From assembly GCF_044704955.1 (NCBI RefSeq), contig NC_091995.1, forward strand, positions 53,010,001-53,074,000: 64,000 nucleotides of DNA, in the 5' to 3' direction. The stretch comes from Pristiophorus japonicus. Its lineage: Eukaryota. Shown here in pieces: positions 1 through 37,659 of the stretch (its first letter is position 1; the number at the start of each line of letters is the position of its first letter). The notes under the pieces are model-generated. The model saw only the letters and a list, made by a program, of their open reading frames with translations. It made no database searches and had not been told where the DNA came from. A program made the translations under genes and the position numbers.

Positions 1-1
1 A

Positions 2-1984
2 AACTTTTCCGGGGCGAAGGTGCGGATCCACTTGGTCCCAGAGGCACGACCCATTCACCACAAGGTGCGAGCAGTACCTCACTTGATGAGGGAGAGAGTG
101 GAAATCGAGCTGGACAGGTTGCAATGCGAGGGCATCATCTCCCCAGTGGAATTCAGCGAGTGGGCCAGCCCGATTGTTCCAGTACTCAAACGTGATGGCA
201 CGGTCAGGATTTGCGGCGATTATAAAGTAACTATTAATCGTTTCTCGCTACAGGTCCAATACCGCTGCCCAAGGCAGACGATCTATTTGCGACACTGGCA
301 GGAGGAAAGACGTTCACCAAGCTCAACCTGACTTCGGCCTACATGACGCAGGAGCTGGAGGAGTTTTTGAAGGGCCTCACCTGCATCAATACGCACAAGG
401 GACTGTTGATCTACAACAGATGCCTGTTTGGAATTCGGTCGGCTGCAGTGATCTTCCAGAGAAACATGGAGAGCCTACTCAAGTCAGTACCACACACGGT
501 GGTTTTTCAGAACGACATATTGTTCACGGGTCGGGACACCATCAAGCACCTACAAAACCTGGAGGAGGTCCTCCAGCGACTGGATCGTGTAGGGCTGCGG
601 CTGAAGAGGTCGAAATGCAGCTTCATGGCAACAGAAGCGGAGTTTTTGGGGAGAAAGATCGCGGCGAATGGCATTCGGCCCACAGACGCCAAGGCAGAGG
701 CTATCAGGAACGCCCCCAGGCCACAGAACGTCACAGAGCTGCGGTCGTTCCTGGGACTCCTCAACTATTTTGGTAACTTCCTACTGGGGTTAAGCACCCT
801 CTTAGAGCCCCTACATGTGTTATTGCGCAAAGGTGAGAACTGGGTATGGGGAAAAAAACAAGTGATTGCTTTTGAGAAAGCCAGAAACATTTTATGCTCC
901 AACAAGCTGCTTGTATCGTACACCCCGTGTAAAAGACTTGTGCTAGCATGTGATGCGTTGTCGTACGGAGTCGGGAGTGTATTCCAAAAAGCTAACGTTG
1001 CGGGGAAGTTGCAACCTGTCGCCTATGCCTCCAGGAGCTTGTCTAAGGCCGAGAGGGCCTACAGCATGATTGAGAAAGTGGCATTAGCGTGTGTGTTCAG
1101 GGTAAAGAAAATGCATCAATACCTGTTTGGCCTCAAATTTGAGCTGGAAACCGATCACAAGCCCCTCATATCCCTGTTTGCTGAAAACAAGGGGATAAAT
1201 ACTAATGCCTCAGCCCGCTTACAAAGGTGGGCACTCGCGCTATCAGCATATAACTATACCATCCACCACAGGCCAGGCACCGAGAACTGTGCGGATGCTC
1301 TCAGCCATCTACCATTGCCCACCACGGGGGTGGAAATGGTGCAGCCTGCAAACTTGTTGATGATGGCGCAGCCCGCAGACTTGTTGATGGTCATGGAAGC
1401 GTTTGATAATGATAAATCACCTGTCATGGCCCGCCAGATTAGGACTTGGACCAGCCAAGATCCTCTGCTGTCCCTAGTAAAAAACTGTGTACTGCATGAT
1501 CAGGTAGAGAGCAGGCGGCAGCAACAAAATGTAAACGATGGTCACGCCACTGTGTCATGGGAAATTGATCTGAATGACCCTGTGTATGTGCTAAACTATG
1601 GACATGGTCCCAAGTGGATCGCTGGCACGGTGATAGCTAAAGAAGGGAACAGGGTGTTTGTAATCAAACTAGACAATGGACAAATTTGCAGAAAGCACCT
1701 GGACCAAACGAGGCTGCGGTTCACAGACCGCCCTGAACAACCCACAGCAGACACCACCTTTTACGAGCCCACAACACACACCCAAAGGATCAACGACACC
1801 ACGCCAGACCAGGAAATCGAACCCATCACGCCCAACAGCCCAGCAAGGCCAGGCTCACCCAGCAGCCCTACAGGGACAACAACACGCCAGCCCAGCGAGG
1901 GCACAGCCCAACACACCAGAACAGACATTTGTACCGAGGCAGTCCACCAGGGCAAGAAAGGCTCCCGACCGCCTCACCTTGTAA
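2..1984 (+). pseudogene. pol: Gypsy pol pseudogene (RT, RNase H, integrase C-terminal remnant)
   Basis: A 1-nt deletion at ~263 splits QY(P)LPKADDLFATLAGGKTFTKL. A 1-nt insertion in the C-run at 1907-1909 shifts the natural end (...PRQSTRARKAPDRLTL*, TAA 1982-1984, just before the PPT) out of frame. RT catalytic positions read Asn (AAC 325-327, KLNL; AAC 511-513, FQND). No HHCC or DDE integrase motifs are present. Confidence 0.93.
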
Positions 1985-2004
1985 ATAGTTTTCACTTTGA
2001 CTTT

Positions 2005-2017
2005 GGGGGAGGAGTGA
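2005..2017 (+). other. Polypurine tract (plus-strand primer) of the Gypsy element
   Basis: GGGGGAGGAGTGA lies 20 nt after the pol stop and immediately before the TG that starts the LTR. Confidence 0.88.
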
Positions 2018-2228
2018 TGTTGTGTATCTGTAAAGCATGTACTCCCATGTTCCACCACCAGGGAGCGCATCCCCTGAAGTCCCAAGGGATCCCAGCATCC
2101 CTTGGGAGCACTGTATATAAGCCGGCCCCTAAGGCCTGTTCCTCACTCTGGAGTGTCTTAATAAAGACTGAGGTCACTGTTACTTTAACCTCCCTGTGTG
2201 CAGTCTCATCTGTGTTAGGAACACAATA
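2018..2228 (+). repeat. 3' LTR (~211 bp)
   Basis: Begins TGTTGTGT and ends ACACAATA (7/8 terminal inverted match). Contains TATATAA (2114-2120) and AATAAA (2160-2165) in the expected order, and follows the PPT. Confidence 0.88.
2114..2165 (+). promoter_or_regulatory. LTR TATA box (2114-2120) and polyadenylation signal (2160-2165)
   Basis: TATATAA followed 40 nt later by AATAAA inside the LTR, the usual U3/R arrangement. Confidence 0.75.
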
Positions 2229-2397
2229 GACCCAATCATGGTGGCCCAGCCCGGCACTCCATCTTGGGTGCTGGGCTGCTGGCCCAGTCTCATGCTGCCC
2301 TGGTGGCCAGTGGCCCTCCACTTTAATGCAAATGATAAAAGTCCTGGCCCCGGAAGATTACCACCCCCAATTGGGGCAAGGACCAATTTCGCCTCCA
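2229..2397 (-). mobile_element. Fragment of a GC-rich non-autonomous (MITE-like) repeat, copy A, interrupted by the Gypsy LTR
   Basis: The reverse complement of 2338-2397 matches 3306-3365 at 50/60 nt without gaps. 2247-2281 also matches 3565-3600 in the same inverted orientation. The fragment abuts the LTR end. Confidence 0.65.
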
Positions 2398-2845: not shown

Positions 2846-2881
2846 AGAGAGTGAGAGTGGAGGGTTGAGTTCTTTACTTAC

Positions 2882-2933
2882 CGGGAGAGACCCAGGAAAA
2901 GCACAGGGATGTGGAGAGAAGGATCAGCAACAT
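2882..2933 (-). CDS. Candidate first coding exon (signal peptide/leader) of a secreted or membrane protein: MLLILLSTSLCFSWVSP + 1 nt, phase-1 donor
   Basis: The - strand reads CCCAGA ATG TTG CTG ATC CTT CTC TCC ACA TCC CTG TGC TTT TCC TGG GTC TCT CCC G|GTAAGT. It has A at -3, an uncharged hydrophobic peptide, a consensus donor (2876-2881) and TATAAA ~72 nt upstream. Downstream exons are not visible in the window. Confidence 0.7.
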
Positions 2934-2979
2934 TCTGGGAATCCACTGCCCCTATTCCAATCGGTGACTGGGAATAAAA

Positions 2980-3224
2980 CTCTCCGAGTGGGACACATCG
3001 GCTGTTTATAGACTGAAAAATACACAACAGGTCTATTGGGGCCCCACTTTACTGTTTATCTTGCACTTTGATCATGTCCTTGATCTGAAAATGCAGAGCC
3101 AGAGGGTGAATGATTGGTTACTCTGGGAACAATCTCCAATGAAAGCACTTGGCAGTCCCCTGTCACCAGTTACCAGGAAGCTCAAACTGAGGCCGGTTGA
3201 GAGTCAGTCTGTGAAACAGAAACT
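2980..3224 (-). promoter_or_regulatory. Candidate Pol II promoter of the leader-exon gene
   Basis: On the - strand: TATAAA 3005-3010, CCAAT 3035-3039, AGATAA 3056-3061, ATCAAAG (TCF/LEF) 3066-3072, AACCAATCA 3111-3119. On the + strand: CAGGAAG (ETS core) 3174-3180 and the ISRE 3211-3224. The inferred TSS is ~2980-2990. Confidence 0.55.
3211..3224. promoter_or_regulatory. Interferon-stimulated response element (ISRE/IRF site)
   Basis: GTGAAACAGAAACT matches the ISRE consensus RNGAAANNGAAACT exactly, about 200 nt upstream of the TATA box. Confidence 0.55.
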
Positions 3225-3305: not shown

Positions 3306-3885
3306 TGGGGGCAAAATTGCCCCGCGCCCCAATTGGGAGTGGTAACCATCTGGGGCCAGGACTTTCTGACCCCGGTGCAGAAGTCCCGCTGAATGTGGCT
3401 TGCCGCCCCTTAACGGAAGCAGAGCGCAATCTTGTGCGGATGCTCCACATGGCGCTGACACGCTTCAGTGTCCCTCTCTTTCGATAAAAGGGGTGGGTCG
3501 CTGCACACTCTGCAAGGCCTCTGACGGCCTCCACTCGGTCATCAGGCCATCGTTGGACCAGACTTGCAGCCCGGCACCCAAAACGGAGTGCCAGGCTGCA
3601 CGAGGGTGACCCAGACCACGCGAGGGCCGCCCTCATAGAGCCAATGCGAGAGTCAGCAATCAAAAAAAGATGGCGGATCGGGCACTGGTGCTCTCCCCTT
3701 TAACAAACTACCGACGAATCTCGCAGTGACATCCGCTCGCGCCAGCCTCGTGGCCCGTGGGGTAATTTCCTCTGATAGGTCGGAGCGGTGTGGGGACGCC
3801 GCAAACGTTGATGATGTCATCACCGATTGCGCACTAGCCATAGCAGCGCCCTCCGGAAACTCCATGCAAAATGTCCCGAGTGGCG
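3306..3885 (+). mobile_element. GC-rich non-autonomous (MITE-like) repeat, copy B, ending at the satellite boundary
   Basis: Starts (T)GGGGGCAAAATTGCCCC. It is homologous to copy A over 3306-3365 and, with gaps, ~3480-3600. It is CpG-rich with internal palindromes, and no matching right terminus is seen before the array. The extent beyond ~3610 is inferred from composition only. Confidence 0.5.
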
Positions 3886-6800
3886 GGAGTGAGGGGAGGG
3901 GTCAAACTAACGGAGTGAGGGGAGGGGTCAAACTAATGGAGTGAGGGTAAGGGTCAAACTAATGGAGTGAGGGAAGCGGTCACACTAACAGTGAGGGGAG
4001 GGGTCAAACTAACGGAGTGATGGGAGGGGTCAAACTAACGGGGAGTGATGGGAGGGGTCAAACTAACCAAGTGAGGGGGGAGGTCAAACTAACTCGGAAT
4101 GAGGGGAGGGGTCAAACTAACGGAGTGATGGGAGGGGTCAAACTAACGGAGTGAGGGTAAGGGTCAAACTAATGGAGTCATGGAAGCGGTCACACTAACA
4201 GTGAGGGGAGGGGTCAAACTAACGGAGTGATGGGAGGGGTCAAACTAATGGGGAGTGATGGGAGGGGTCAAACTAACCAAGTGAGGGGGGAGGTCAAACT
4301 AACGGAATGAGGGGAGGGGTCAAACTAACGGAGTGATGGGAGGGGTCAAACTAACAGGGAGTGATGGGAGGGGTCAAACTAACGGAGTGAGGGAAGGGGT
4401 CAAACTAACGGGGAGTGATGGGAGGGGTCAAACTAACCAAGTGAGGGGAGATGTCAAACTAACGGAGGGAGGAGAGGGGTCAAACTGAAGGAGTGAGGGG
4501 AGGGGTCAAACTAATGGAGTGAGGGGAGGGTTCAAAATAACGGAGTGAGGGCAGCGGTCAAAATAAAGGAGTGAGGGGAGGGGTCAAACTAACGGAGTGA
4601 GGGGAGGGGTCAAAATAATGGAGTGAGGGGAGGGGTCAAACTAACGGAGTGAGGGGAGGGTCAAACTAATGGAGTGAGGGGAGGGGTCAAACTAAAGGAG
4701 TGATGGGAGGGGTCAAACTAACGGGGAGTGATGGGAGGGGTCAAACTAACCAAGTGAGGGGGGAGGTCAAACTAACGGATTGAGGGGAGGGGTCAAACTA
4801 ACGGAGTGATGGGAGGGGTCAAACTAACAGAGTGAGGGTAAGGGTCAAACTAATGGAGTCAGGGAAGCGGTCACACTAACAGTGAGGGGAGGGGTCAAAC
4901 TAACGGAGTGATGGGAGGGGTCAAACTAACAGGGAGTGATGGGAGCGGTCAAACTAACGGAGTGAGGGAAGGGGTCAAACTAACGGGGAGTGATGGGAGG
5001 GGTCAAACTAACCAAGTGAGAGGGGATGTCAAACTAACGGAGGGAGGAGAGGGGTCAAACTAATGGAGTGAGGGGAGGGTTCAAAATAACGGAGTGAGGG
5101 CAGCGGTCAAAATAAAGGAGTGAGGGGAGGGGTCAAACTAACGGAGTGAGGGGAGGGGTCAAAATAATGGAGTGAGGGGAGGTGTCAAACTGAAGGAGTG
5201 AGGGGAGGGGTCAAACTAACGGAGTGAGGTGAGAGGTCAAACTAACGGGGAGTGAGGGGAGGAGACAAACTAACGGAGTGAGGGGAGGGGTCAAACTAAC
5301 GGAGTGAGGGGAAGGGTCAAACTAATGGAGTGAGGGGAGGTGTCAAACTAACGGAGTGAGTGGAGGGGTCAAACTAACAGGGAGCGAGGGGAGGGGTCAA
5401 ACTAACGGAGTGAGAGGAGGGGTCAAACTAACGGAGAGAGGGTAGTGGTCAAACTAATGGAGTGAGGGGAGGGGTCAAACTATTGGAGTGAGGATGGGAG
5501 GGTTCAAACTAACCGAGTGAGGGGAGAGGTCAAACTAACGGAGGGAGGGGGGGGGTCAAACTGAAGGAGTGAGGGGAGGGGTCAAACTAATGGAGTGAGG
5601 GGAGGGGTCAAACTAACGGAGTGAGGGGAGAGGTCAAACTAACGGAGTGAGGGGAGGGGTCAAACTAATGTAGTGAGGGGAAGGGTCAAACTAACGGAGG
5701 GAGTGGAGGGGTCAAACTGAAGGAGTGAGGGGAGGGGTCAAACTAATGGAGTGAGGGGAGGTTTCAAAATAACGGAGTGAGGGCAGCGGTCAAAATAAAG
5801 GAGTGAGGGGAGGGGTCAAACTAACGGAATGAGGGGAGGGGTCAAAATAACGGAGTGAGGGGAGGGGTCAAACTAACTGAGTGAGGGGAGGGTCAAACTA
5901 ATGGAGTGAGGGGAGGGATCAAACTAACGGAGTGAGGGGAGGAATCAAACTAACGGAGTGAGGGGAGAGGTCAAAATAACGGAGTGAGGGGAGGGGTCAA
6001 ACTAACAGAGTGAGGGGAGGGGTCAAACTGAAGGAGTGAGTGGAGGGGTCAAACTAATGGAGTGAGGGGAGGTTTCAAAATAACGGAGTGAGGGCAGCGG
6101 TCAAAATAAAGGAGTGAGAGGAGGGGTCAAACTAACGGAGTGAGGGGAGGAATCAAACTAACGGAGAGAGGGGAGAGGTCAAAATAACGGAGTGAGGGGA
6201 GGTGTCAAACTAACGGAGTGAGGGGAGGGGTCAAACTGAAGGAGTGAGGGGAGGGGTCAAACTAATGGAGTGAGGGGAGGTTTCAAAATAACGGAGTGAG
6301 GGCAGCGGTCAAAATAAAGGAGTGAGGGGAGGGGTCAAACTAACGGAATGAGGGGAGGGGTCAAAATAACGGAGTGAGGGGAGGAATCAAACTAACGGAG
6401 TGAGGGCAGGAGTCAAAATAACGGAGTGAGGGGAGGTGTCAAACTAACGGAGTGAGGGGAGTGGTCAAACTAGCGGAGTGAGGGGAGGGTCAAACTAATG
6501 GAGTGAGGGGAGGGGTCAAAATAACAGAGTGAAAGGAGGGGTCAAACTAACGGAGTGAGGGGAGGGGTCAAACTAACGGGGAGTGAGGGGAGGGGTCAAG
6601 CTAATGGTGTGAGGGGAGGGGTCAAACTAACGGAGTGAGGGGAGGGGTCAAACTAATGGAGTGAGGGAAGGGGTCTAACTAATAGAGCGAGGGGAGGGTT
6701 CAAAATAACGGAGTGAGGGGAGAGGTCAAACTAACGGGGAATGAGGGGAGGAGACAAACTAACGGAGTGAGGGGAGGGGTCAAACTAACGGAGTGAGGGG

Positions 6801-8414
6801 AAGGGTCAAACTAATGGAGTGAGGGGAGGTGTCAAACTAACGGAGTGAGGGGAGGGGTCAAACTAACGGAGTGAGGGGAGGGGTCAAACTAACAGGGAGC
6901 GAGGGGAGGGGTCAAACTAACGGAGTGAGAGGAGGGGTCAAACTAACGGAGTGAGGGTAGGGGTCAAACTAACGGAGTGATGGGAGGAGTCAAACTAACG
7001 GGGAGTGATGGGAGGGGTCAAACTAACGGAGTGAGGGAAGGGGTCAAACTAACGGGGAGTGATGGGAGGGGTCAAACTAACCAAGTGAGGGCGGAGGTCA
7101 AACTAACGGAGGGAGGGGAGCGGTCAAACTGAAGGAGTGAGGGGAGGGGTCAAACTAATGGAGTGAGGGGAGGTTTCAAAATAACGGAGTGAGGGCAGCG
7201 GTCAAAATAAAGGAGTGAGGGGAGGGGTCAAACTAACGGAATGAGGGGAGGGGTCAAAATAACGGAGTGAGGGGAGAGGTCAAACTACTGGAGTGAGGGG
7301 AGGGTCAAACTAATGGAGTGGGGGAGGGATCAAACTAATGGAGTGAGGGGAGGAATCCAACTTGCGGAGTGAGGGGAGAGGTCAAACTAACGGAGTGAAG
7401 GGAGGGGTCAAACGAACGGAGTGAGAGGAAGGGTCAAACTAACGGGGAGTGAGGCAAGGGGTCAATCTAACGGAGTGAGGGAAGAGGTCAAACTAACGGA
7501 GTGAGGGGAGGGGTCAAACTAACGGGGAGTGAGGGGAGGGGTCAAGCTAATGGTGTGATGGGAGGGGTCAAACTAACGGGGAGTGATGGGAGGGGTCAAA
7601 CTAACGGAGTGAGGGAAGGGGTCAAACTAACGGGGAGTGATGGGAGGGGTCAAACTAACCAAGTGAGGGCGGAGGTCAAACTAACGGAGGGAGGGGAGCG
7701 GTCAAACTGAAGGAGTGAGGGGAAGGGTCAAACTAATGAAGTGAGGGGAGGTTTCAAAATAACGGAGTGAGGGCAGCGGTCAAAATAAAGGAGTGAGGGG
7801 AGGGGTCAAACTAACGGAATGAGGGGAGGGGTCAAAATAACGGAGTGAGGGGAGAGGTCAAACTAACGGAGTGAGGGGAGGGTCAAACTAATGGAGTGAG
7901 GGGAGGGATCAAACTAATGGAGTGAGGGGAGGAATCCAACTAGCGGAGTGAGAGGAGAGGTCAAACGAACGGAGTGAGAGGAAGGGTCAAACTAACGGGG
8001 AGTGAGGCGAGGGGTCAATCTAACAGAGTGAGGGGAGAGGTCAAACTAACGGGGAGTGAGGGGAGGGGTCAAACTAACGGAGTGAGGGGAGAGGTCAAAC
8101 TAACGGAGTGAGGGAAGAGGTCAAACTAACGGAGTGAGGGGAGGGGTCAAACTAACAGGGAGTGAGGGGAGGGGTCAAGCTAATGGTGTGATGGGAGGGG
8201 TCAAACTAACGGAGTAGGGGAGGGGTCAAAATAACGGAGTGAGGGGAGGGGTCAAACTAACGGAGTGAGGGGAGAGGTCAAAGTAACGGGGAGTGAGGGG
8301 AGCAGACAAACTAACGGAGTGAAGGAGGGGTCAAACTAACGGAGTGAGGGGAAGGGTCAAACTAATGGAGTGAGGGGAGGTGTCAAACTAACGGAGTGAG
8401 GGGAGAGGTCAAAC

Positions 8415-11400
8415 TAACGGAGTGAGGGGAGGGGTCAAACTAACGGGGAGTGAGGGGAGGTGTCAAGCTAATGGTGTGAGGGGAGGGGTCAAACTAATGG
8501 AGTGAGGGGAGGTTTCAAAATAACGGAGTGAGGGGAGGGGTCAAACTAACGGAGTGAGGGGAGAGGTCAAACTAACGGGGAGTGAGGGGAGGAGACAAAC
8601 TAATGGAGTGAGGGGAGGTGTCAAACTAACGGAGTGAGGGGAGGGGTCAAACTAACGGAGTGAGTGGAGGGGTCAAACTAACAGGGAGCGAGGGGAGGGG
8701 TCAAACTAAAGGAGTGAGAGGAGGGGTCAAACTAACGGAGAGAGGGTAGGGGTCAAACTAATGGAGTGAGGGGAGGGGTCAAACTATTGGAGTGAGGAGA
8801 GGGGTCAAACTAACGGGGAGTGATGGGAGGGGTCAAACTAACCGAGAGAGGGGAGAGGTCAAACTAACGGGGAGTGAGGGGAGGGGTCAAACTAACGGAG
8901 TGAGGGGAGGGGTCAAACTAACGGAGCGAGGGGAGGATTCAAATTTACGTGGAGTGAGGGGAGGGGTCAAACTAACAGTGTGAGGGGAGGGGTCAAACTA
9001 ACGGAGTGAGAGGAGGGTCTCAAACTAACGAAGTGAGAGGAGGGTCTCAAACTAACGGAGTGAGGGGAGGGGTCAAACTAAAGGAGTGAGGGGAGGGATC
9101 AAACTAACAGTGTGAGGGGAGGGATCAAACTAACGGAGTGAGAGGAGGGGTCAAACTAACGGAGTGAGTGGAGGGGTCAAACTAACGGAGTGAGGGGAGG
9201 TGTCAAACTAACGGAGTGAGGGAAGGGGTCAAACTAACGGGGAGTGATGGGAGGGGTCAAACTAACCAAGTGAGGGGGGATGTCGAACTAACGGAGGGAG
9301 GAGAGGGGTCAAACTGAAGGAGTGAGGGGAGGGGTCAAACTAATGGAGTGAGGGGAGGGTTCAAAATAACGGAGTGAGGGCAGCGGTCAAAATAAAGGAG
9401 TGAGGGGAGGGGTCAAACTAACGGAGTGAGGGGAGGGGTCAAAATAATGGAGTGAGGGGAGGGGTCAAACTAACGGAGTGAGGGGAGGGTCAAACTAATG
9501 GAGTGAGGGGAGGGGTCAAACTAACGGAGTGATGGGAGGGGTCAAACTAACGGGGAGTGATGGGAGGGGTCAAACTAACCTCGTGAGGGGGGAGGTCAAA
9601 CTAACGGATTGAGGGGAAGGGTCAAACTAACGGAGTGATGGGAGGGGTCAAACTAACAGAGTGAGGGTAAGGGTCAAACTAATGGAGTCAGGGAAGCGGT
9701 CACACTAACAGTGAGGGGAGGGGTCAAACTAACGGAGTGATGGGAGGGGTCAAACTAACGGGGAGTGATGGGAGGGGTCAAACTAACCAAGTGAGGGGGG
9801 AGGTCAAACTAACGGAATGAGGGGAGGGGTCAAACTAACGGAGTGATGGGAGGGGTCAAACTAACAGGGAGTGATGGGAGAGGTCAAACTAACGGAGTGA
9901 GGGAAGGGGTCAAACTAACGGGGAGTGATGGGAGGGGTCAAACTAACCAAGTGAGGGGGGATGTCAAACTAACGGAGGGAGGAGAGGGGTCAAACTAATG
10001 GAGTGAGGGGAGGGTTCAAAATAACGGAGTGAGGGCAGCGGTCAAAATAAAGGAGTGAGGGGAGGGGTCAAACTAACGGAGTGAGGGGAGGGGTCAAAAT
10101 AATGGAGTGAGGGGAGGTGTCAAACTGAAGGAGTGAGGGGAGGGGTCAAACTAACGGAGTGAGGTGAGAGGTCAAACTAACGGGGAGTGAGGGGAGGAGA
10201 CAAACTAACGGAGTGAGGGGAGGGGTCAAACTAACGGAGTGAGGGGAAGGGTCAAACTAATGGAGTGAGGGGAGGTGTCAAACTAACGGAGTGAGTGGAG
10301 GGGTCAAACTAACAGGGAGCGAGGGGAGGGGTCAAACTAACGGAGTGAGAGGAGGGGTCAAACTAACGGAGAGAGGGTAGTGGTCAAACTAATGGAGTGA
10401 GGGGAGGGGTCAAACTATTGGAGTGAGGATGGGAGGGTTCAAACTAACCGAGTGAGGGGAGAGGTCAAACTAACGGAGGGAGGGGAGGGGTCAAACTGAA
10501 GGAGTGAGGGGAGGGGTCAAACTAATGGAGTGAGGGGAGGGGTCAAACTAACGGAGTGAGGGGAGAGGTCAAACTAACGGAGTGAGGGGAGGGGTCAAAC
10601 TAATGTAGTGAGGGGAAGGGTCAAACTAACGGAGGGAGTGGAGGGGTCAAACTGAAGGAGTGAGGGGAGGGGTCAAACTAATGGAGTGAGGGGAGGTTTC
10701 AAAATAACGGAGTGAGGGCAGCGGTCAAAATAAAGGAGTGAGGGGAGGGGTCAAACTAACGGAATGAGGGGAGGGGTCAAAATAACGGAGTGAGGGGAGG
10801 GGTCAAACTAACTGAGTGAGGGGAGGGTCAAACTAACGGAGTGAGGGGAGGAATCAAACTAACGGAGTGAGGGGAGAGGTCAAAATAACGGAGTGAGGGG
10901 AGGTGTCAAACTAACAGAGTGAGGGGAGGGGTCAAAATAAAGGAGTGAGTGGAGGGGTCAAACTAACGGAGTGAGGGGAGGAATCAAACTAACGGAGAGA
11001 GGGGAGAGGTCAAAATAACGGAGTGAGGGGAGGTGTCAAAATAACGGAGTGAGGGGAGGGGTCAAACTGAAGGAGTGAGGGGAGGGGTCATACTAATGGA
11101 GTGAGGGGAGGTTTCAAAATAACGGAGTGAGGGCAGCGGTCAAAATAAAGGAGTGAGGGGAGGGGTCAAACTAACGGAATGAGGGGAGGGGTCAAACTAA
11201 CGGAGTGAGGGAAGAGGTCAAACTAACGGAGTGAGGGGAGGGGTCAGACTAACGGGGAGTGAGGGGAGGGGTCAAGCTAATGGTGTGATGGGAGGGGTCA
11301 AACTAACGGGGAGTGATGGGAGGGGTCAAACTAACGGAGTGAGGGAAGGGGTCAAACTAACGGGGAGTGATGGGAGGGGTCAAACTAACCAAGTGAGGGC

Positions 11401-14400
11401 GGAGGTCAAACTAACGGAGGGAGGAGAGCGGTCAAACTGAAGGAGTGAGGGGAGGGGTCAAACTAATGGAGTGAGGGGAGGTTTCAAAATAACGGAGTGA
11501 GGGCAGCGGTCAAAATAAAGGAGTGAGGGGAGGGGTCAAACTAACGGAATGAGGGGAGGGGTCAAAATAACGGAGTGAGGGGAGGGGTCAAACTAACGGG
11601 GAGTGAGGGGAGGTGTCAAGCTAATGGTGTGAGGGGAGGGGTCAAACTAATGGAGTGAGGGGAGGTTTCAAAATAACGGAGTGAGGGGAGGGGTCAAACT
11701 AACGGAGTGAGGGGAGAGGTCAAACTAACGGGGAGTGAGGGGAGGAGACAAACTAATGGAGTGAGGGGAGGTGTCAAACTAACGGAGTGAGGGGAGGGGT
11801 CAAACTAACGGAGTGAGTGGAGGGGTCAAACTAACAGGGAGCGAGGGGAGGGGTCAAACTAAAGGAGTGAGAGGAGGGGTCAAACTAACGGAGAGAGGGT
11901 AGGGGTCAAACTAATGGAGTGAGGGGAGGGGTCAAACTATTGGAGTGAGGAGAGGGGTCAAACTAACGGGGAGTGATGGGAGGGGTCAAACTAACCGAGA
12001 GAGGGGAGAGGTCAAACTAACGGGGAGTGAGGGGAGGGGTCAAACTAACGGAGTGAGGGGAGGGGTCAAACTAACGGAGCGAGGGGAGGATTCAAATTTA
12101 CGTGGAGTGAGGGGAGGGGTCAAACTAACAGTGTGAGGGGAGGGGTCAAACTAACGGAGTGAGAGGAGGGTCTCAAACTAACGAAGTGAGAGGAGGGTCT
12201 CAAACTAACGGAGTGAGGGGAGGGGTCAAACTAAAGGAGTGAGGGGAGGGATCAAACTAACAGTGTGAGGGGAGGGATCAAACTAACGGAGTGAGAGGAG
12301 GGGTCAAACTAACGGAGTGAGTGGAGGGGTCAAACTAACGGAGTGAGGGGAGGTGTCAAACTAACGGAGTGAGGGAAGGGGTCAAACTAACGGGGAGTGA
12401 TGGGAGGGGTCAAACTAACCAAGTGAGGGGGGATGTCGAACTAACGGAGGGAGGAGAGGGGTCAAACTGAAGGAGTGAGGGGAGGGGTCAAACTAATGGA
12501 GTGAGGGGAGGGTTCAAAATAACGGAGTGAGGGCAGCGGTCAAAATAAAGGAGTGAGGGGAGGGGTCAAACTAACGGAGTGAGGGGAGGGGTCAAAATAA
12601 TGGAGTGAGGGGAGGGGTCAAACTAACGGAGTGAGGGGAGGGTCAAACTAATGGAGTGAGGGGAGGGGTCAAACTAACGGAGTGATGGGAGGGGTCAAAC
12701 TAACGGGGAGTGATGGGAGGGGTCAAACTAACCTCGTGAGGGGGGAGGTCAAACTAACGGATTGAGGGGAAGGGTCAAACTAACGGAGTGATGGGAGGGG
12801 TCAAACTAACAGAGTGAGGGTAAGGGTCAAACTAATGGAGTCAGGGAAGCGGTCACACTAACAGTGAGGGGAGGGGTCAAACTAACGGAGTGATGGGAGG
12901 GGTCAAACTAACGGGGAGTGATGGGAGGGGTCAAACTAACCAAGTGAGGGGGGAGGTCAAACTAACGGAATGAGGGGAGGGGTCAAACTAACGGAGTGAT
13001 GGGAGGGGTCAAACTAACAGGGAGTGATGGGAGAGGTCAAACTAACGGAGTGAGGGAAGGGGTCAAACTAACGGGGAGTGATGGGAGGGGTCAAACTAAC
13101 CAAGTGAGGGGGGATGTCAAACTAACGGAGGGAGGAGAGGGGTCAAACTAATGGAGTGAGGGGAGGGTTCAAAATAACGGAGTGAGGGCAGCGGTCAAAA
13201 TAAAGGAGTGAGGGGAGGGGTCAAACTAACGGAGTGAGGGGAGGGGTCAAAATAATGGAGTGAGGGGAGGTGTCAAACTGAAGGAGTGAGGGGAGGGGTC
13301 AAACTAACGGAGTGAGGTGAGAGGTCAAACTAACGGGGAGTGAGGGGAGGAGACAAACTAACGGAGTGAGGGGAGGGGTCAAACTAACGGAGTGAGGGGA
13401 AGGGTCAAACTAATGGAGTGAGGGGAGGTGTCAAACTAACGGAGTGAGTGGAGGGGTCAAACTAACAGGGAGCGAGGGGAGGGGTCAAACTAACGGAGTG
13501 AGAGGAGGGGTCAAACTAACGGAGAGAGGGTAGTGGTCAAACTAATGGAGTGAGGGGAGGGGTCAAACTATTGGAGTGAGGATGGGAGGGTTCAAACTAA
13601 CCGAGTGAGGGGAGAGGTCAAACTAACGGAGGGAGGGGAGGGGTCAAACTGAAGGAGTGAGGGGAGGGGTCAAACTAATGGAGTGAGGGGAGGGGTCAAA
13701 CTAACGGAGTGAGGGGAGAGGTCAAACTAACGGAGTGAGGGGAGGGGTCAAACTAATGTAGTGAGGGGAAGGGTCAAACTAACGGAGGGAGTGGAGGGGT
13801 CAAACTGAAGGAGTGAGGGGAGGGGTCAAACTAATGGAGTGAGGGGAGGTTTCAAAATAACGGAGTGAGGGCAGCGGTCAAAATAAAGGAGTGAGGGGAG
13901 GGGTCAAACTAACGGAATGAGGGGAGGGGTCAAAATAACGGAGTGAGGGGAGGGGTCAAACTAACTGAGTGAGGGGAGGGTCAAACTAACGGAGTGAGGG
14001 GAGGAATCAAACTAACGGAGTGAGGGGAGAGGTCAAAATAACGGAGTGAGGGGAGGTGTCAAACTAACAGAGTGAGGGGAGGGGTCAAAATAAAGGAGTG
14101 AGTGGAGGGGTCAAACTAACGGAGTGAGGGGAGGAATCAAACTAACGGAGAGAGGGGAGAGGTCAAAATAACGGAGTGAGGGGAGGTGTCAAAATAACGG
14201 AGTGAGGGGAGGGGTCAAACTGAAGGAGTGAGGGGAGGGGTCATACTAATGGAGTGAGGGGAGGTTTCAAAATAACGGAGTGAGGGCAGCGGTCAAAATA
14301 AAGGAGTGAGGGGAGGGGTCAAACTAACGGAATGAGGGGAGGGGTCAAACTAACGGAGTGAGGGAAGAGGTCAAACTAACGGAGTGAGGGGAGGGGTCAG

Positions 14401-14735
14401 ACTAACGGGGAGTGAGGGGAGGGGTCAAGCTAATGGTGTGATGGGAGGGGTCAAACTAACGGGGAGTGATGGGAGGGGTCAAACTAACGGAGTGAGGGAA
14501 GGGGTCAAACTAACGGGGAGTGATGGGAGGGGTCAAACTAACCAAGTGAGGGCGGAGGTCAAACTAACGGAGGGAGGAGAGCGGTCAAACTGAAGGAGTG
14601 AGGGGAGGGGTCAAACTAATGGAGTGAGGGGAGGTTTCAAAATAACGGAGTGAGGGCAGCGGTCAAAATAAAGGAGTGAGGGGAGGGGTCAAACTAACGG
14701 AATGAGGGGAGGGGTCAAAATAACGGAGTGAGGGG
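8415..14735 (+). repeat. 3153-bp tandem duplication within the array (2 copies)
   Basis: Identical ORFs at 8792/11945 and 11231/14384. Rare variant markers recur at +3153 (TCGTGA 9581/12734; GTGTCAAGC 8460/11613). Boundaries are approximate. Confidence 0.9.
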
Positions 14736-16214
14736 AGAGGTCAAAATAACGGAGTGAGGGGAGAGGTCAAACTAACGGAATGAGGGGAGGGGTCAAAATA
14801 ACGGAGTGAGGGGAGAGGTCAAACTAACGGAGTGAGGGGAGGGTCAAACTAATGGAGTGAGAGGAGGGATCAAACTAATGGAGTGAGGGGAGGAATCCAA
14901 CTAGCGGAGTGAGAGGAGAGGTCAAACTAACGGAGTGAAGGGAGGGGTCAAACGAACGGAGTGAGAGGAAGGGTCAAACTAACGGGGAGTGAGGCGAGGG
15001 GTCAATCTAACGGAGTGAGGGGAGAGGTCAAACTAACGGGGAGTGAGGGGAGGGGTCAAACTAACGGAGTGAGGGGAGAGGTCAAACTAACGGAGTGAGG
15101 GAAGAGGTCAAACTAACAGAGTGAGGGGAGGGGTCAAACTAACAGGGAGTGAGGGGAGGGGTCAAGCTAATGGTGTGATGGGAGGGGTCAAACTAACGGA
15201 GTAGGGGAGGGGTCAAAATGACGGAGTGAGGGGAGGGGTCAAACTAACAGAGTGAGGGGAGAGGTCAAAGTAACGGGGAGTGAGGGGAGCAGACAAACTA
15301 ACGGAGTGAGGGGAGGGGTCAAACTAACGGAGTGAGGGGAAGGGTCAAACTAATGGAGTGAGGGGAGGTGTCAAACTAACGGAGTGAGGGGAGAGGTCAA
15401 ACTAACGGAGTGAGGGGAGGGGTCAAACTAACGGGGAGTGAGGGGAGGTGTCAAGCTAATGGTGTGAGGGTAGTGGTCAAACTAATGGAGTGAGGGGAGG
15501 TTTCAAAATAACAGAGTGAGGGAAGGGGTCAAACTAACGGAGTGAGGGGAGAGGTCAAACTAACGGGGAGTGAGGGGAGGAGACAAACTAATGGAGTGAG
15601 GGGAGGGGTCAAACTAACGGAGTGAGGGGAAGGGTCAACCTAATGGAGTGAGGGGAGGTGTCAAACTAACGGAGTGAGGGGAGGGGTCAAACTAACGGAG
15701 TGAGTGGAGGGGTCAAACTAACAGGGAGCGAGGGGAGGGGTCAAACTAAAGGAGTGAAAGGAGGGGTCAAACTAACGGAGAGAGGGTAGGGGTCAAACTA
15801 ATGGAGTGAGGGGAGGGGTCAAACTATTGGAGTGAGGAGAGGGGTCAAACTAACGGGGATTGAGGGGAGGGGTCAAACTAACGGAGTGAGGGCAGTGGGG
15901 TCAAACTAACGGAGCGAGGGGAGGATTCAAATTTACGTGGAGTGAGGGGAGGGGTCAACTAACAGTGTGAGGGGAGGGGTCAAACTAACGGAGTGAGAGG
16001 AGGGTCTCAAACTAACGAAGTGAGAGAGGGTCTCAAACTAACAGAGTGAGGGGAGGGGTAAAACTAAAGGAGTGAGGGGAGGGATCAAACTAACAGTGTG
16101 AGGGGAGGGATCAAACTAACGGAGTGAGAGGAGGGGTCAAACTAACGGAGTGAGTGGAGGGGTCAAACTAACGGAGTGAGGGGAGGTGTCAAACTAACGG
16201 AGTGAGGGGAGGGT

Positions 16215-19200
16215 TCAAACTAACGGAGTGAGGTGAGGGGTCAAACTAACGGAGTGAGGTGAGGGGTCAAACTAACGGGGAGTGAGGGGAGGGGTCAAGC
16301 TAATGGAGTGAGGGGAGGGGTCAAACTAACGGGGAATGAGGGGAGCGGTCAAACTAACGGAGTGAGGGGAGGTGGTCAAACGAACGGAGTGAGGGGAGGG
16401 TTCAAACTAACGGAGTGAGGTGAGGGGTCAAACTAACGGAGTGAGGTGAGGGGCTCAAACTAACGGAGTGAGGGGAGGGGTTAAAGTCACAGATTGAGGG
16501 GAGGGGTCAAGCTCACGGAGTGAAGGGAGGGGGTCAAACTAACGGAGTGTGGGGAGGGGTCAAACTGATGGGGTGTGAGGGGAGGGGTCAAACTAACGGA
16601 GTGAGGGGAGGGGTCCAACTAACGGGGAGTGAGGGGAGGGGTCAAACTAACGGAGTGAGGGGAGGGGTCCAACTAACGGGGAGTGAGGGGAGGGGTCAAA
16701 CTAACGGAGTGAGGGGAGGGGTCAAACAAACGTAGTGAGGTGAGGGGTCAATCTAACGGGGTGTGAGGGGAGGGGGTCAAACTAATGGAGTGAGGGCAGG
16801 GGCTCAAACTAACGGAGTGAGGGGAGCGGTCAAACTAACGTGGAGTGAGGGGAGGGGTCAATCTAAGGGAGTGAGAGGAGGGGGTCAAACTAACGGAGTG
16901 AGGGGAGGTGGTCAAACGAACGGAGTGAGGGGAGGGTTCAAACTAACGGAGTGAGGTAAGGGGTCAAACTAACGGAGTGAGGTGAGGGGCTCAAACTAAC
17001 GGAGTGAGGGGAGGGGTCAAACTAACGGAGTGAGGGGAGGTGGTCAAACTAACGGCGTGTGGGGAAGGGGTCAAACTAACGGAGTGAGGGGATGGGTCAC
17101 ACTAACGGAGTGAGGGGAGGGGTCACACTAACGGAGTGAGGGGAGGGGTTAAAGTCACAGATTGAGGGGAGGGGTCAAGCTCACGGAGTGAAGGGAGGGG
17201 GTCAAACTAACGGAGTGTGGGGAGGGGTCAAACTGATGGGCTGTGAGGGGAGGGGTCAAACTAACGGAGTGAGGGGAGGGGTCCAACTAACGGAGTGAGG
17301 GGAGGTGTCAAACTAAAGGAGCGAGGGGAGGATTCAAACCTACGTGGAGTGAGGGGAGGGGTCAAACTAACAGCGCGAGGGGAGGGGTCAAACTAACGGA
17401 GTGAGGGGAGGGTTCAAGCTTACGCGGAGTGAGGGGAGGAGTCAAACTAACGGAGTGAGAGGAGGGTCTCAAACTAACGGAGTGAGGGGTGTGTTCAAAC
17501 TAACGGAGTGAGGGGAGAGGCTCAAACTAACGGAGTGAGGGGAGGGGTCAAACTAAAGGAGTGAGGGGAGGGGTCAATCTAAGGGAGTGAGAGGAGGGGG
17601 TCAAACTAACGGAGTGAGGGGAGGGGCTCAAACGAACCGAGTGAGGGGAGAGGTCAAACTAAAGGAGTGAGGGGAGGGATCAAACTAACGGAGTGAGGGG
17701 AGGAGTCAAACTAATAGAGTGAGGGGAGAGGTCAAACTAACGGAGTGAGGGGAGGGGTCACACTCACGGAGTCAGGGGAGGGGTCAAACTAACGGAGTGA
17801 GGGGAGGGTTCAAACAAACGTAGTGAGGTGAGGGGTCAATCTAACGGGGTGTGAGGGGAGGGGGTCAAACTAATGGAGTGAGGGCAGGGGCTCAAACTAA
17901 CGGAGTGAGGGGAGCGGTCAAACTAACGGGGAGTGAGGGGAGGGGTCAATCTAAGGAAGTGAGAGGAGGGGGTCAAACTAACGGAGTGAGGGGAGGTGCT
18001 CAAACTAACCGAGTGAGAGGAGGGGTCAAACTAACAGAGTGAGGGGAGGGGTCAAACTAACATTGTGAGGGGAGGGGTCAAACTAACGAAGTGAGGGGAG
18101 GAGTCACACTAACGGAGTGAGGGGAGGGATCAAACTAACGGAGTGAGAGGAGGGGTCAAACTAACGGAGTGAGTGGAGGTGTCAAACTAACGGAGTGAGG
18201 GGAGGTGTCAAACTAACGGAGTGAGGGGAGGGGTCAAACTAACGGAGTGAGGGGACGGTCAAACTAATGGAGTGAGGGGAAGGGTCAAAATAACGGAGTG
18301 AGGGGAGGGGTCAAAATAACGGAGTGAGGGGAGGGGTCAAACTAACGGAGTGAGGAAGGGGTCAAAGTAACGGAGTGAGGGGAGGGTCAAACTAATGGAG
18401 TGAGGGGAAGAGTCAAAATAACGGAGTGAAGGGAGGGGTCAAGCTAATGGAGTGAGGGGAGTGGTCAAACTAATGGAGTGAGGGGAGGGGTCAAACTAAC
18501 GGAGTGAGGGGAGGGGTCAAACTAATGGAGTGAGGGGAGGATTCAAAATAAAGGAGTGAGGGCAGGGGTCAAACTAACGGAGTGAGAGGAGGGGGTCAAA
18601 GTAACGGGGAGTGAGGGGAAGGGGTCTAACTGAAGGAGTGAGGGGAGGGGTCAAACTAATGGAGTGATGGGAGGGTTCAAACTAACGAAGTGAGGGGATG
18701 GGTCACCCTAACGGAGTGAGGGGAGGGGTTAAAGTCACAGATTGAGGGGAGGGGTCAAGCTCACGGAGTGAACGGAGGGCGTCAAACTAACGGAGTGTGC
18801 GGAAGGGTCAAACTGATGGGGTGTGAGGGGAGGGGTCAAACTAACGGAGTGAGGGGAGGGGTCAAACTAACGGGGAGTGAGGGGAGGGGTCAAACTAACG
18901 GAGTGAGGGGAGGATTCAAACTTACGTGGAGTGAGGGGAGGGGTCAAACTAACGGAGCGAGGGGAGGATTCAAACTTACGTGGAGTGAGGGGAGGGGTCA
19001 AACTAACAGTGTGAGGGGAGGGGTCAAACTAAAGGAGTGAGGGGAGAGGTCAAACTAACAGAATGAGGGGAGGGGTCAAACTAACGGAGTGAGGGGTGGG
19101 TTCAAACAAACGGAGTGAGGTGATGGATCAATCTAACGGGGTGTGAGGGGAGGGGATCAAACTAATGGAGTGAGGGGAGGGGCTCAAACTAACGGAGTGA

Positions 19201-22200: not shown

Positions 22201-23590
22201 GGATTCAAAATAAAGGAGTGAGGGCAGGGGTCAAACTAACGGAGTGAGAGGAGGGGGTCAAAGTAACGGGGAGTGAGGGGAAGGGGTCTAACTGAAGGAG
22301 TGAGGGGAGGGGTCAAACTAATGGAGTGATGGGAGGGTTCAAACTAACGAAGTGAGGGGATGGGTCACCCTAACGGAGTGAGGGGAGGGGTTAAAGTCAC
22401 AGATTGAGGGGAGGGGTCAAGCTCACGGAGTGAACGGAGGGCGTCAAACTAACGGAGTGTGCGGAAGGGTCAAACTGATGGGGTGTGAGGGGAGGGGTCA
22501 AACTAACGGAGTGAGGGGAGGGGTCAAACTAACGGGGAGTGAGGGGAGGGGTCAAACTAACGGAGTGAGGGGAGGATTCAAACTTACGTGGAGTGAGGGG
22601 AGGGGTCAAACTAACGGAGCGAGGGGAGGATTCAAACTTACGTGGAGTGAGGGGAGGGGTCAAACTAACAGTGTGAGGGGAGGGGTCAAACTAAAGGAGT
22701 GAGGGGAGAGGTCAAACTAACAGAATGAGGGGAGGGGTCAAACTAACGGAGTGAGGGGTGGGTTCAAACAAACGGAGTGAGGTGATGGATCAATCTAACG
22801 GGGTGTGAGGGGAGGGGATCAAACTAATGGAGTGAGGGGAGGGGCTCAAACTAACGGAGTGAGGGGAGCGGTCAAATTAACGGGGAGTGAGGGGAGGGTT
22901 CAATCTAAGGGAGTGAGAGGAGGGGGTCAAACTAACGGAGTGAGGGGAGGGGCTCAAACTAACGGAGTGAGGGGAGCGGTCAAACTAACGGGGAGTGAGG
23001 GGAGGGGTCAATCTAAGGGAGTGAGAGGAGGGGGTCAAACTAACGGAGTGAGGGGAGGGGTCAAACTAACGGAGTGAGGGGAGGAGTCAAACTAACAGTG
23101 TGAGGGGAGGGGTCAAACTAACGGAGCGAGGGGAGGATTCAAACATACGTGGATTGAGGGGAGGGGTCAAACTAACGGAGTGAGGGGAGGGTTCAAACTA
23201 ACATTGTGAGGGGAGGGGTCAAACTAACGGAGCGAGGGGAGTGGTCAAAATAACGGGGAGTGAGGGGAGGGGTCAAACTAACAGTGTGAGGGGAGGGGTC
23301 AAACTAACGGAGTGAGGGGAGCAGTCAAACTAACGGGGAGTGAGGGGAGGGTTCAATCTAAGGGAGTGAGAGGAGGGGGTCAAACTAACGGAGTGAGGGG
23401 AGGGGCTCAAACTAACGGAGTGAGGGGAGCGGTCAAACTAACGGGGAGCGAGGGGAGGGGTCAATCTAAGGGAGTGAGAGGAGGGGGTCAAACTAACGGA
23501 GTGAGGGGAGGGGTCAAACTAACGGAGTGAGGGGAGGGTTCAAACTAACATTGTGAGGGGAGGGGTCAAACTAACGGAGCGAGGGGAGGA
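16215..23590 (+). repeat. ~3.66-3.7-kb tandem duplication within the array (2 copies)
   Basis: Six ORF pairs lie at an exact offset of 3662 (16520/20182, 16763/20425, 17851/21513, 18768/22430, 19143/22805, 19650/23312). Boundaries are approximate. Confidence 0.92.
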
Positions 23591-37400: not shown

Positions 37401-37659
37401 GGGGCTCAAACTAACGGAGTGAAGGGAAGGGGTCAAACTAACGGAGTGAGGGGATGGGTCACACTAACGGAGTGAGGGGTGGGGTTAAAGTCACAGATTG
37501 AGGGGAGGGGTCAAGCTCATGGAGTGAGGGGAGGGGTCAAACTAATGGAGTGAGGGGAGGGGTCAAACTAACGGAGCGAGGGGAGGATTCACACTTACGT
37601 GTAGTGAGGGGAGGGGTCAAACTAACAGTGTGAGGGGAGGGGTCAAACTAACGGAGTGA

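What the first reader, a model, noticed from the sequence alone, without database searches (positions are those of the whole stretch)
2876..3010. Hidden signal-peptide first exon on the minus strand, missed by the ORF track
Seen: five independent signals line up in the only non-repeat island of the window. These are TATAAA (3005-3010), an ATG-free 5'UTR of ~50 nt, an ATG with A at -3 (2933), 17 uncharged mostly hydrophobic codons (MLLILLSTSLCFSWVSP), and G|GTAAGT after 52 nt. Established: a stand-alone ~50-nt leader exon closed by a phase-1 intron is typical of MHC class I/II, beta-2-microglobulin, antigen-receptor V segments and many IgSF genes, though not exclusive to them. Inference: a host gene starts here and runs leftwards out of the window, so 1-2875 is intron 1. 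The family cannot be named from this exon alone.
Basis: partly seen in the sequence, partly recalled or inferred. Interest (0 to 1): 0.8.

Follow-up and report, generated by a model that had tools for sequence, protein, structure and literature searches.

The report
Shark MHC-type promoter and leader exon
A short signal-peptide exon sits just downstream of a promoter built like those of antigen-presenting (MHC class I) genes, so it is very probably the start of such a gene, though the rest of the gene lies outside the stretch I could read.

Summary
On the minus strand there are TATAAA (3010-3005), an ATG with A at -3 (2933), 17 uncharged codons (MLLILLSTSLCFSWVSP) and G|GTAAGT after 52 nt.

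The new point is upstream on the same strand: a perfect ISRE, then S-, X1-, X2- and Y-like boxes, then CCAAT. The S-to-X2 and X2-to-Y distances (33 and 25 nt) equal those of the mouse H2-K module, rebuilt from primers printed in PMC4374748. This is the MHC class I/beta-2-microglobulin promoter layout, so the exon is almost surely not chance.

Not shown:
- Transcription or splicing: no sequencing run was listed.
- An exon 2: none was recognised in the 2.9 kb downstream, which is largely an antisense gypsy-like pol remnant.
- Whether the gene is intact.

Two diverged inverted repeat copies flank the island, and a 26-bp satellite of at least 60 kb starts 950 bp upstream of the ATG. A relic or transposon-carried 5' end therefore stays open.

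Scan notes, which I did not check, call the genome Japanese sawshark. They report the same promoter type elsewhere on this piece, so the scan has found this kind before on other DNA.

Verdict: new member of a known kind, of modest interest.

The parts
3213..3224 (-). ISRE, AGTTTCTGTTTC, a perfect match to AGTTTCNNTTTC
   Evidence: It is the only match in the window. Alone it is not beyond chance: 0.82 are expected per shuffled window, and 59 of 100 shuffles hold at least one. Its weight comes from its place, 26 nt upstream of the S core on the same strand.
3193..3206 (-). S-box-like stretch with core AACC at 3198-3195
   Evidence: The core lies 33 nt upstream of TGAC, as in mouse H2-K. The extent of the box is my estimate.
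3169..3177 (-). X1-like box CCTGGTAAC (RFX-type)
   Evidence: The X1 consensus CCTRGYAAC that I used is recalled. H2-E has CTAGCAAC in the same register.
3161..3165 (-). X2-like box TGACA (CRE half-site with one departure from TGACG)
   Evidence: It starts 12 nt after the start of X1 and 25 nt before ATTGG, as TGAC does in H2-K.
3136..3140 (-). Y box, ATTGG (inverted CCAAT, NF-Y type)
3113..3117 (-). CCAAT box downstream of the SXY module
   Evidence: The element order EnhA-ISRE-SXY-CAAT-TATA comes from passages of PMC4753418.
3005..3010 (-). TATAAA, 77 nt upstream of the ATG
2934..2980 (-). Predicted 5' UTR of about 45 nt, free of ATG; initiator-like TTATTCC at 2977
   Evidence: The start site is inferred from the TATA box and is not observed.
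2882..2933 (-). Coding part of exon 1: MLLILLSTSLCFSWVSP plus the first base of codon 18
   Evidence: mean Kyte-Doolittle 1.68; best 11-residue stretch 2.41
2876..2881 (-). Splice donor GTAAGT, phase 1
1..2229 (+). Context: degenerate Ty3/gypsy-like pol remnant, antisense to the exon, inside the putative intron 1
   Evidence: RVT_1 E=1.2e-11, RT_RNaseH E=4.5e-29, RT_RNaseH_2 E=1.1e-23. No integrase family was reported.
2247..2397 (+). Context: copy A of an unclassified interspersed repeat, in the putative intron
   Evidence: inverted matches to 3598-3531 at 75% and to 3365-3306 at 83%
3306..3598 (-). Context: copy B of the same repeat, inverted, ending about 80 nt upstream of the ISRE
3886..64000 (.). 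Context: 26-bp satellite array, G-rich on the + strand, running to the end of the window
   Evidence: TRF was run on 1-12000 and 52000-64000 only. The part between is judged from the constant GC skew.

Best explanation
This is the 5' end of an MHC-family gene, most likely of class I type, read on the minus strand.

An interferon-response element (ISRE) and an S-X1-X2-Y enhanceosome module lie 291 to 203 nt upstream of the ATG. In mammals that module is the landing site of RFX, CREB/ATF and NF-Y and, through them, of NLRC5 or CIITA. Downstream follow a CCAAT box and a TATAAA box.

Transcription would start near 2975-2980. The first exon would carry about 45 nt of leader RNA and 52 nt coding for a 17-residue signal-peptide core. 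It would be spliced at G|GTAAGT in phase 1 to an exon 2 (an alpha-1 or Ig-type domain) that lies left of the window.

Shown: the motifs, their order, their spacing, the open frame and the donor. Inferred: factor binding, the start site, splicing, the existence of exon 2, and that the gene works.
For: - Exon signals are all present at the stated places. A leader-like pattern is expected only 0.011 times per 3,885 bp over both strands, and 0 simulated hits in 20,000 sequences had a TATAAA upstream.
- On the same strand the order is ISRE 3224, S core 3198, X1 3177, X2 3165, Y 3140, CCAAT 3117, TATAAA 3010, ATG 2933.
- That order is the one described for mammalian class I promoters. EnhA/ISRE plus the SXY module lie in the proximal 200 bases (passages of PMC3987962). 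Enhancer A, ISRE, S-X-Y, CAAT and TATA lie within 235 bp of the start codon (passages of PMC4753418).
- Spacing matches mouse H2-K: AACC to TGAC is 33 nt and TGAC to ATTGG is 25 nt in both. The H2-K module was rebuilt from the primers in sections 22-23 of PMC4374748. That paper states that SXY spacing is tightly constrained and critical for NLRC5 binding (passages).
- The composite pattern AACC-N17-CCTRGYAAC-N3-TGAC-N21-ATTGG occurs once in the window, and in 0 of 100 shuffles even with 2 mismatches allowed.
- Anchored on the Y box, 40 of 91 positions agree with H2-K, clustered in S, X and Y. Against the class II H2-E module the figures are 22 of 88 anchored on Y and 31 of 88 anchored on X1.
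- The island is strongly CpG-depleted (o/e 0.08-0.28 in the four 200-nt windows starting at 2900-3200), while the flanks further out score 0.63-1.09. This fits old resident DNA with younger insertions on both sides.
- Scan notes, unchecked: the same piece carries class I and B2M-type promoters 3.6 and 1.9 Mb away, and a class I gene whose leader and alpha-1 exons span 34 kb.
Against: - There is no transcript or splice evidence. The look-up of sequencing runs listed 0 runs, so no reads could be laid.
- No exon 2 was seen. On the minus strand from 2881 to 1 there are 21 open stretches of at least 45 aa. The 10 I scanned, nine of them the nearest to the donor plus 1499-1257, hit no MHC, Ig or other credible Pfam family.
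- Overall similarity to H2-K is not above chance. It is 35 of 72 at the expected register, while an unrelated place reaches 36, and 105 of 2,000 simulated sequences reach 36. The case therefore rests on motif cores and spacing, which I picked after seeing the sequence.
- No NF-kB/enhancer A site (GGGRNNYYCC) lies anywhere in 3900-2850.
- The module sits about 60-90 nt further from the ATG than the 200-235 nt quoted for mammals.
- The ISRE-to-S distance is 8 nt longer than in H2-K.
- X2 is TGACA, not TGACG.
- The signal peptide has no basic residue and ends in Pro. Its cleavage site cannot be judged without exon 2, and no SignalP-type tool was on hand.
- A satellite of at least 60 kb starts 950 bp upstream of the ATG and a retroelement remnant lies 650 bp downstream of the donor. 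This is a setting where gene relics are common.
Confidence: 0.55

Rival explanations
1. Relic or displaced 5' end. The promoter and leader exon truly derive from an MHC-type gene, but no gene body follows. Either the gene was broken by the retroelement and satellite expansions, or the 900-bp island was copied here as cargo between the two inverted repeat copies, in the manner of a Pack-MITE.
For: - Inverted copies of one repeat bracket the island with their matching ends outward: 2247-2313 with 3598-3531 (75%) and 2338-2397 with 3365-3306 (83%).
- No exon 2 was found in 2.9 kb.
- The satellite and the retroelement lie close by.
- Scan notes, unchecked, report exon-less solitary SXY modules and MHC gene fragments inside transposons elsewhere in this genome.
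Against: - The exon frame, the donor, the TATA box and the ISRE are all intact.
- The repeat copies are diverged from each other, differ by an indel of about 140 nt, and show no clear terminal repeats or target-site duplication at 2247/3598 on reading.
- The copies are CpG-rich while the island is CpG-poor. This suggests different ages, that is, two separate later insertions.
- Long first introns are reported for a class I gene on this piece (scan note, unchecked).
Confidence: 0.3
2. It is the start of a secreted or membrane protein gene outside the MHC family, such as another IgSF gene, and the SXY-like motifs are a partial coincidence or a borrowed enhancer.
For: - The leader exon itself names no family.
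- Overall similarity of the promoter to H2-K is at chance level.
- There is no enhancer A.
- The module lies further from the ATG than in mammals.
Against: Four boxes stand in the right order and strand with both spacings equal to H2-K, plus an ISRE and a CCAAT box. In mouse, a genome-wide scan with the spaced consensus found only 15 matches, 11 of them near start sites of NLRC5 targets (passage of PMC4374748).
Confidence: 0.08
3. It is the leader exon (L-part 1) of an immunoglobulin or T-cell-receptor V segment.
For: The exon has the right length (52 nt), a phase-1 donor and a hydrophobic leader.
Against: - No V-type or any other Pfam domain was found in the open stretches tested between the donor and 1764. 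V leader introns are typically one to a few hundred nt (recalled).
- The only octamer, ATGCAAAT, lies at 2326-2333 on the + strand, downstream of the exon inside a repeat copy.
- The promoter is of SXY type.
Confidence: 0.02
4. It is pure chance: unrelated short motifs happen to line up.
For: - All motif choices were made after seeing the sequence.
- The ISRE alone is expected 0.82 times per shuffled window.
- Whole-module identity to H2-K is at chance level.
Against: - The joint occurrence is far below chance. The leader-like exon is expected 0.011 times per 3.9 kb, and no simulated hit in 20,000 sequences had a TATA box.
- The composite SXY pattern occurred in 0 of 100 shuffles.
- All elements lie on one strand, in the functional order, within 350 nt.
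Confidence: 0.03

Closest known systems
Mammalian MHC class I proximal promoter (ISRE plus SXY module, NLRC5 enhanceosome), e.g. mouse H2-K
   Same: The order ISRE, S, X1, X2, Y, CCAAT, TATA is the same and on one strand. The S-core-to-X2 (33 nt) and X2-to-Y (25 nt) distances equal those of H2-K. A short leader exon with a phase-1 donor follows.
   Different: There is no enhancer A/NF-kB site. The ISRE-to-S distance is 8 nt longer. The module lies 203-291 nt from the ATG rather than within about 200-235. X2 is TGACA. Overall sequence identity is at chance level. Binding of RFX, NF-Y or NLRC5 is untested.
MHC class II / invariant chain / W-category SXY promoters (CIITA enhanceosome), e.g. mouse H2-Eb
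   Same: There is an S-X-Y module. The X1 box CCTGGTAAC resembles the class II-type X1 (CTAGCAAC in H2-E) more than it resembles the H2-K X1. The leader exon has a phase-1 donor.
   Different: The S region does not match H2-E: only 22 of 88 positions agree when anchored on Y and 31 of 88 when anchored on X1. An ISRE directly upstream is a class I/B2M trait (passages).
Beta-2-microglobulin gene 5' end
   Same: It has an ISRE plus SXY promoter, being an NLRC5 target (PMC4374748 passages), and a leader exon closed in phase 1 (recalled).
   Different: Scan notes place a probable B2M promoter 1.93 Mb away on this piece (unchecked), so this would have to be a second copy. Nothing in the exon speaks for or against it.
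Other SXY promoters noted by this scan in the same genome (s1-879240, s1-879241)
   Same: They have the same motif set and, per those notes, the same H2-K spacing. They lie on the same piece.
   Different: Those notes describe doubled modules and exon-less solitary modules. Here a single module is coupled to a leader exon. I could not see their sequences.

Membership tests
MHC class I-type promoter (ISRE + SXY) | ISRE consensus directly upstream of the SXY module, on the same strand | tested here: met
   AGTTTCTGTTTC lies at 3224-3213, 26 nt before the S core.
MHC class I-type promoter (ISRE + SXY) | S, X1, X2 and Y boxes in order with constrained spacing | tested here: met
   AACC to TGAC is 33 nt and TGAC to ATTGG is 25 nt, identical to mouse H2-K rebuilt from published primers. 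The composite pattern occurred in 0 of 100 shuffles. The motif cores were chosen after seeing the sequence.
MHC class I-type promoter (ISRE + SXY) | Enhancer A (NF-kB sites) upstream of the ISRE | tested here: not met
   No GGGRNNYYCC on either strand of 3900-2850. A repeat copy ends about 80 nt upstream of the ISRE. This feature is not universal among class I genes (HLA-G passage).
MHC class I-type promoter (ISRE + SXY) | CCAAT and TATA boxes between the module and the start codon | tested here: met
   CCAAT at 3117 and TATAAA at 3010; element order.
MHC class I-type promoter (ISRE + SXY) | Occupancy by RFX/CREB/NF-Y and transactivation by NLRC5 or CIITA; interferon inducibility | not testable with these tools
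   This needs ChIP or reporter assays.
Leader (signal-peptide) first exon of MHC/IgSF genes | ATG, hydrophobic core, and exon closed by a phase-1 donor | tested here: met
Leader (signal-peptide) first exon of MHC/IgSF genes | A downstream exon 2 with a phase-1 acceptor that encodes an MHC or Ig-type domain | tested here: inconclusive
   None was found in 10 of the 21 open minus-strand stretches downstream within the window.
Leader (signal-peptide) first exon of MHC/IgSF genes | Transcripts that start here and are spliced at the donor | not testable with these tools
   The look-up of sequencing runs listed 0 runs.
Ig/TCR V segment | A short leader intron followed by a V exon; octamer/TATA promoter | tested here: not met
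   No V-set or other family in the stretches tested down to 1764. The octamer lies only at 2326-2333 (+), downstream of the exon.

The most novel reading that the evidence does not exclude
The exon opens a still undescribed shark gene lineage under classic MHC-type (ISRE + SXY) control, whose promoter works within 1 kb of a satellite of at least 60 kb. That would be either a new class I-like lineage or a non-MHC secreted protein recruited to the NLRC5/CIITA regulon. It would also show that the single-nucleotide S-X-Y register was fixed before sharks and mammals split.
Probability: 0.1. Interest if true: 0.6.

Novelty: new member of a known kind. Interest (0 to 1): 0.3.

Why it matters
If the gene is real, it adds one more MHC-type gene start to the shark MHC-linked chromosome. 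It also gives a clean example of the mammalian S-X-Y spacing kept in a cartilaginous fish.

In my search for SXY, shark and NLRC5, 7 papers held all three terms. Judged from titles and abstract starts only, none is about shark promoters. The regulatory conservation itself therefore seems little documented in the papers I could search. Subscription journals and supplements were not covered.

For annotation, it shows that promoter grammar can rescue short leader exons that ORF-based tracks miss.

If it is a relic, it illustrates how MHC promoter modules are scattered by repeats in this genome.

Tried and rejected

**Left flank.** I tried look-up of encoding contigs with the pol ORF to reach DNA left of the window.

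**Protein searches.** The open frame around the leader is only 26 codons from stop to stop (my reading). The length rules of the search for homologous proteins, the search of protein representatives and the protein-atlas search therefore exclude it, and I did not spend those searches. Whether a public gene model starts with this leader is unknown.

**Scan notes by sequence** gave nothing.

**RNA genes.** Rfam at E up to 1 gave only a sub-threshold miRNA-like match in repeat copy A. ARAGORN found no tRNA in 1-4200. The flanking repeat is thus not shown to be a tRNA-derived SINE, and I could not classify it.

**Whole-module similarity to mouse H2-K or H2-E** is at chance level, so I rejected it as evidence. 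Only the motif cores and their spacing are used.

**Enhancer A** was searched for and not found.

**V-segment reading** was rejected.

**Alignment of the two repeat regions.** My first MAFFT alignment was confusing because the repeat holds palindromes. The blastn self-comparison replaced it.

**Organism.** The name (Japanese sawshark) comes from scan notes only. I did not verify it.

**Recall.** The X1 consensus, the usual length of V leader introns and the B2M exon structure are recalled, not taken from a call.

**Supplements of papers** were not opened. The S figures and tables of PMC4374748 (logos, spacing histograms) may bear on the exact box limits.

Full report
**What is there**

Read on the minus strand, the window shows the following:
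- TATAAA at 3010-3005.
- An ATG at 2933 in the context CCCAGAATGT, so A is at -3.
- A 52-nt open stretch coding for MLLILLSTSLCFSWVSP plus one base.
- The donor CCG|GTAAGT, with the intron starting at 2881, which is phase 1.

Without splicing, the frame stops two codons later. No ATG lies in 2980-2934. One lies at 2998, upstream of the start site expected from the TATA box. An initiator-like TTATTCC is at 2977. The peptide has no charged residue. Its mean Kyte-Doolittle value is 1.68, and its best 11-residue stretch (LLILLSTSLCF) scores 2.41.

**Chance**

I ran 20,000 order-1 Markov simulations of the 3,885-bp non-satellite part. The pattern was an ATG, at least 13 uncharged codons that are at least half hydrophobic, and a phase-1 GTRAGT donor.
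- It is expected 0.011 times per sequence over both strands, or 0.0036 times with GTAAGT.
- None of the simulated hits had a TATAAA 30-130 nt upstream.
- The real sequence has one hit, this one.

The criteria are post hoc. In a genome of several gigabases such exon-like patterns will arise by chance somewhere, so the exon signals alone do not settle the matter.

**The promoter**

Upstream on the same strand lie these elements:
- A perfect ISRE, AGTTTCTGTTTC, at 3224-3213.
- An S-like stretch with core AACC at 3198.
- An X1-like CCTGGTAAC at 3177.
- TGACA at 3165.
- ATTGG at 3140.
- CCAAT at 3117.

Passages of two papers give the layout of mammalian class I promoters. One describes Enhancer A plus ISRE and the SXY module in the proximal 200 bases (PMC3987962). 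The other lists Enhancer A, ISRE, S-X-Y, CAAT and TATA within 235 bp of the start codon (PMC4753418). Passages of PMC4374748 say that S and Y lie at tightly constrained distances from X in NLRC5 targets. They add that spacing is critical for NLRC5 binding and that the S box confers NLRC5 specificity.

That paper prints the primers used to build the mouse H2-K and H2-Eb SXY regions (sections 22 and 23). I rebuilt both modules in a script and compared registers.

| Distance | Window | Mouse H2-K |
|---|---|---|
| AACC to TGAC | 33 nt | 33 nt |
| TGAC to ATTGG | 25 nt | 25 nt |
| ISRE to AACC | 26 nt | 18 nt |

Anchored on the Y box, 40 of 91 positions agree with H2-K, clustered in S, X and Y. 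Against H2-E, 22 of 88 positions agree when anchored on Y and 31 of 88 when anchored on X1. The composite pattern AACC-N17-CCTRGYAAC-N3-TGAC-N21-ATTGG matches once in the window. It matches in 0 of 100 shuffles, even with two mismatches allowed.

**Results that weaken the promoter reading**
- The ISRE alone is expected 0.82 times per shuffled window, and 59 of 100 shuffles hold at least one. The satellite's skewed composition inflates this figure.
- Whole-module ungapped identity to H2-K is at chance level. It is 35 of 72 at the expected register, while an unrelated place in the window reaches 36, and 105 of 2,000 simulated sequences reach 36. For the full 91 nt the score is 40 at the register and 42 elsewhere, and 237 of 2,000 simulations reach 42.
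- There is no NF-kB site.
- The module lies 203-291 nt from the ATG, further than in mammals.
- X2 departs from TGACG by one base.
- The cores and spacings were chosen after I had seen the sequence.

Even so, four boxes plus an ISRE and a CCAAT box stand on one strand in the functional order. Two spacings are exact, and a TATA box and a leader exon follow. I take that as far beyond coincidence.

**Surroundings**
- The + strand of 1-2229 codes a degenerate Ty3/gypsy-like pol (RVT_1, RT_RNaseH and RT_RNaseH_2; no integrase family was reported). It is antisense to the exon and starts 650 bp downstream of the donor.
- From 3886 to the window's end runs a 26-bp satellite. It shows 84-85% matches in TRF on 1-12000 and 52000-64000, and constant GC skew in between.
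- The island is bracketed by two diverged, inverted copies of an unclassified repeat: 2247-2313 with 3598-3531 at 75%, and 2338-2397 with 3365-3306 at 83%. No Rfam family or tRNA explains this repeat.
- CpG observed/expected is 0.08-0.28 in the four 200-nt windows starting at 2900-3200, and 0.63-1.09 in the flanks further out. This fits an old resident promoter with younger insertions beside it.

**Search for exon 2**

On the minus strand from 2881 to 1 there are 21 open stretches of at least 45 residues. I scanned 10 of them against Pfam: nine were the nearest to the donor, and the tenth was 1499-1257. The scan found no MHC, Ig or other credible family. The only hit was a sub-threshold MASE8 match at E=0.033. 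The other 11 lie inside the retroelement and were not scanned.

The only octamer in the window is at 2326-2333 on the + strand, downstream of the exon in repeat copy A. A V-segment leader is therefore unlikely. If the gene continues, it leaves the window.

**What could not be done**
- No sequencing run was listed for 2400-3860, so no reads were laid.
- The leader frame is too short for the protein search tools.
- Transcription, splicing, exon 2 and gene integrity are therefore untested.

**Context from the scan's own notes (AI notes, unchecked by me)**

The notes call the genome Japanese sawshark. On the same piece they report:
- A class I promoter with H2-K spacing 3.6 Mb beyond the window.
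- A probable B2M promoter 1.93 Mb beyond.
- A nonclassical class I gene 12.7 Mb before, whose promoter, leader and alpha-1 exons span 34 kb.
- Exon-less solitary SXY modules.

On other pieces they report MHC fragments inside transposons. These notes make both readings plausible: a real gene with a long first intron, and an orphan module.

**Verdict**

The best reading is the promoter and leader exon of an MHC-family gene, most likely of class I type because of the ISRE and the H2-K-like S register. I give it 0.55 as a working gene start. The rivals:
- A relic or transposon-carried 5' end of such a gene: 0.3.
- Another secreted or IgSF gene: 0.08.
- Pure chance: 0.03.
- A V segment: 0.02.

It is a new member of a known kind. 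The scan has already met this promoter type elsewhere in this genome. Interest is modest.

Noticed in passing
window 3886-64000: A satellite of 26-bp units (consensus GGAGTGAGGGGAGGGGTCAAACTAAC) fills at least 60 kb and runs off the window. Copies match at 84-85%. GC skew is about +0.6 and AT skew about +0.4 on the + strand. It starts 950 bp upstream of the candidate ATG.
   Followed up: partly
window 1-2229 (+): A degenerate Ty3/gypsy-like pol remnant: the RT and RNase H domains hit Pfam, no integrase family is reported, and there is a 27-bp tandem duplication at 1336-1389. It is antisense to the candidate gene.
   Followed up: partly
window 2247-2397 and 3306-3598: Two diverged inverted copies (75-83%) of an unclassified repeat rich in short palindromes (e.g. 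CCCCAATTGGGG) bracket the promoter-exon island. Copy B has about 140 nt that copy A lacks. No target-site duplication was evident on reading.
   Followed up: partly
window 2933-2941 (-): A GAS-like palindrome, TTCCCAGAA, ends at the A of the start codon. It may be coincidence.
   Followed up: no
window 2326-2333 (+): A perfect octamer, ATGCAAAT (0.08 expected per shuffled window), lies inside repeat copy A, in the putative intron. It is not placed as a V promoter element.
   Followed up: no
window 2900-3399: CpG observed/expected falls to 0.08-0.28 across the promoter and exon, while the repeats further out on both sides score 0.63-1.09. The island looks much older, or longer methylated, than its neighbours.
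   Followed up: no
window 2998-2924 (-): An upstream ATG at 2998 opens a 24-codon frame that overlaps the main ATG out of frame. It would matter only if transcription started upstream of the TATA-predicted site, for example from the GATAAA at 3060.
   Followed up: no
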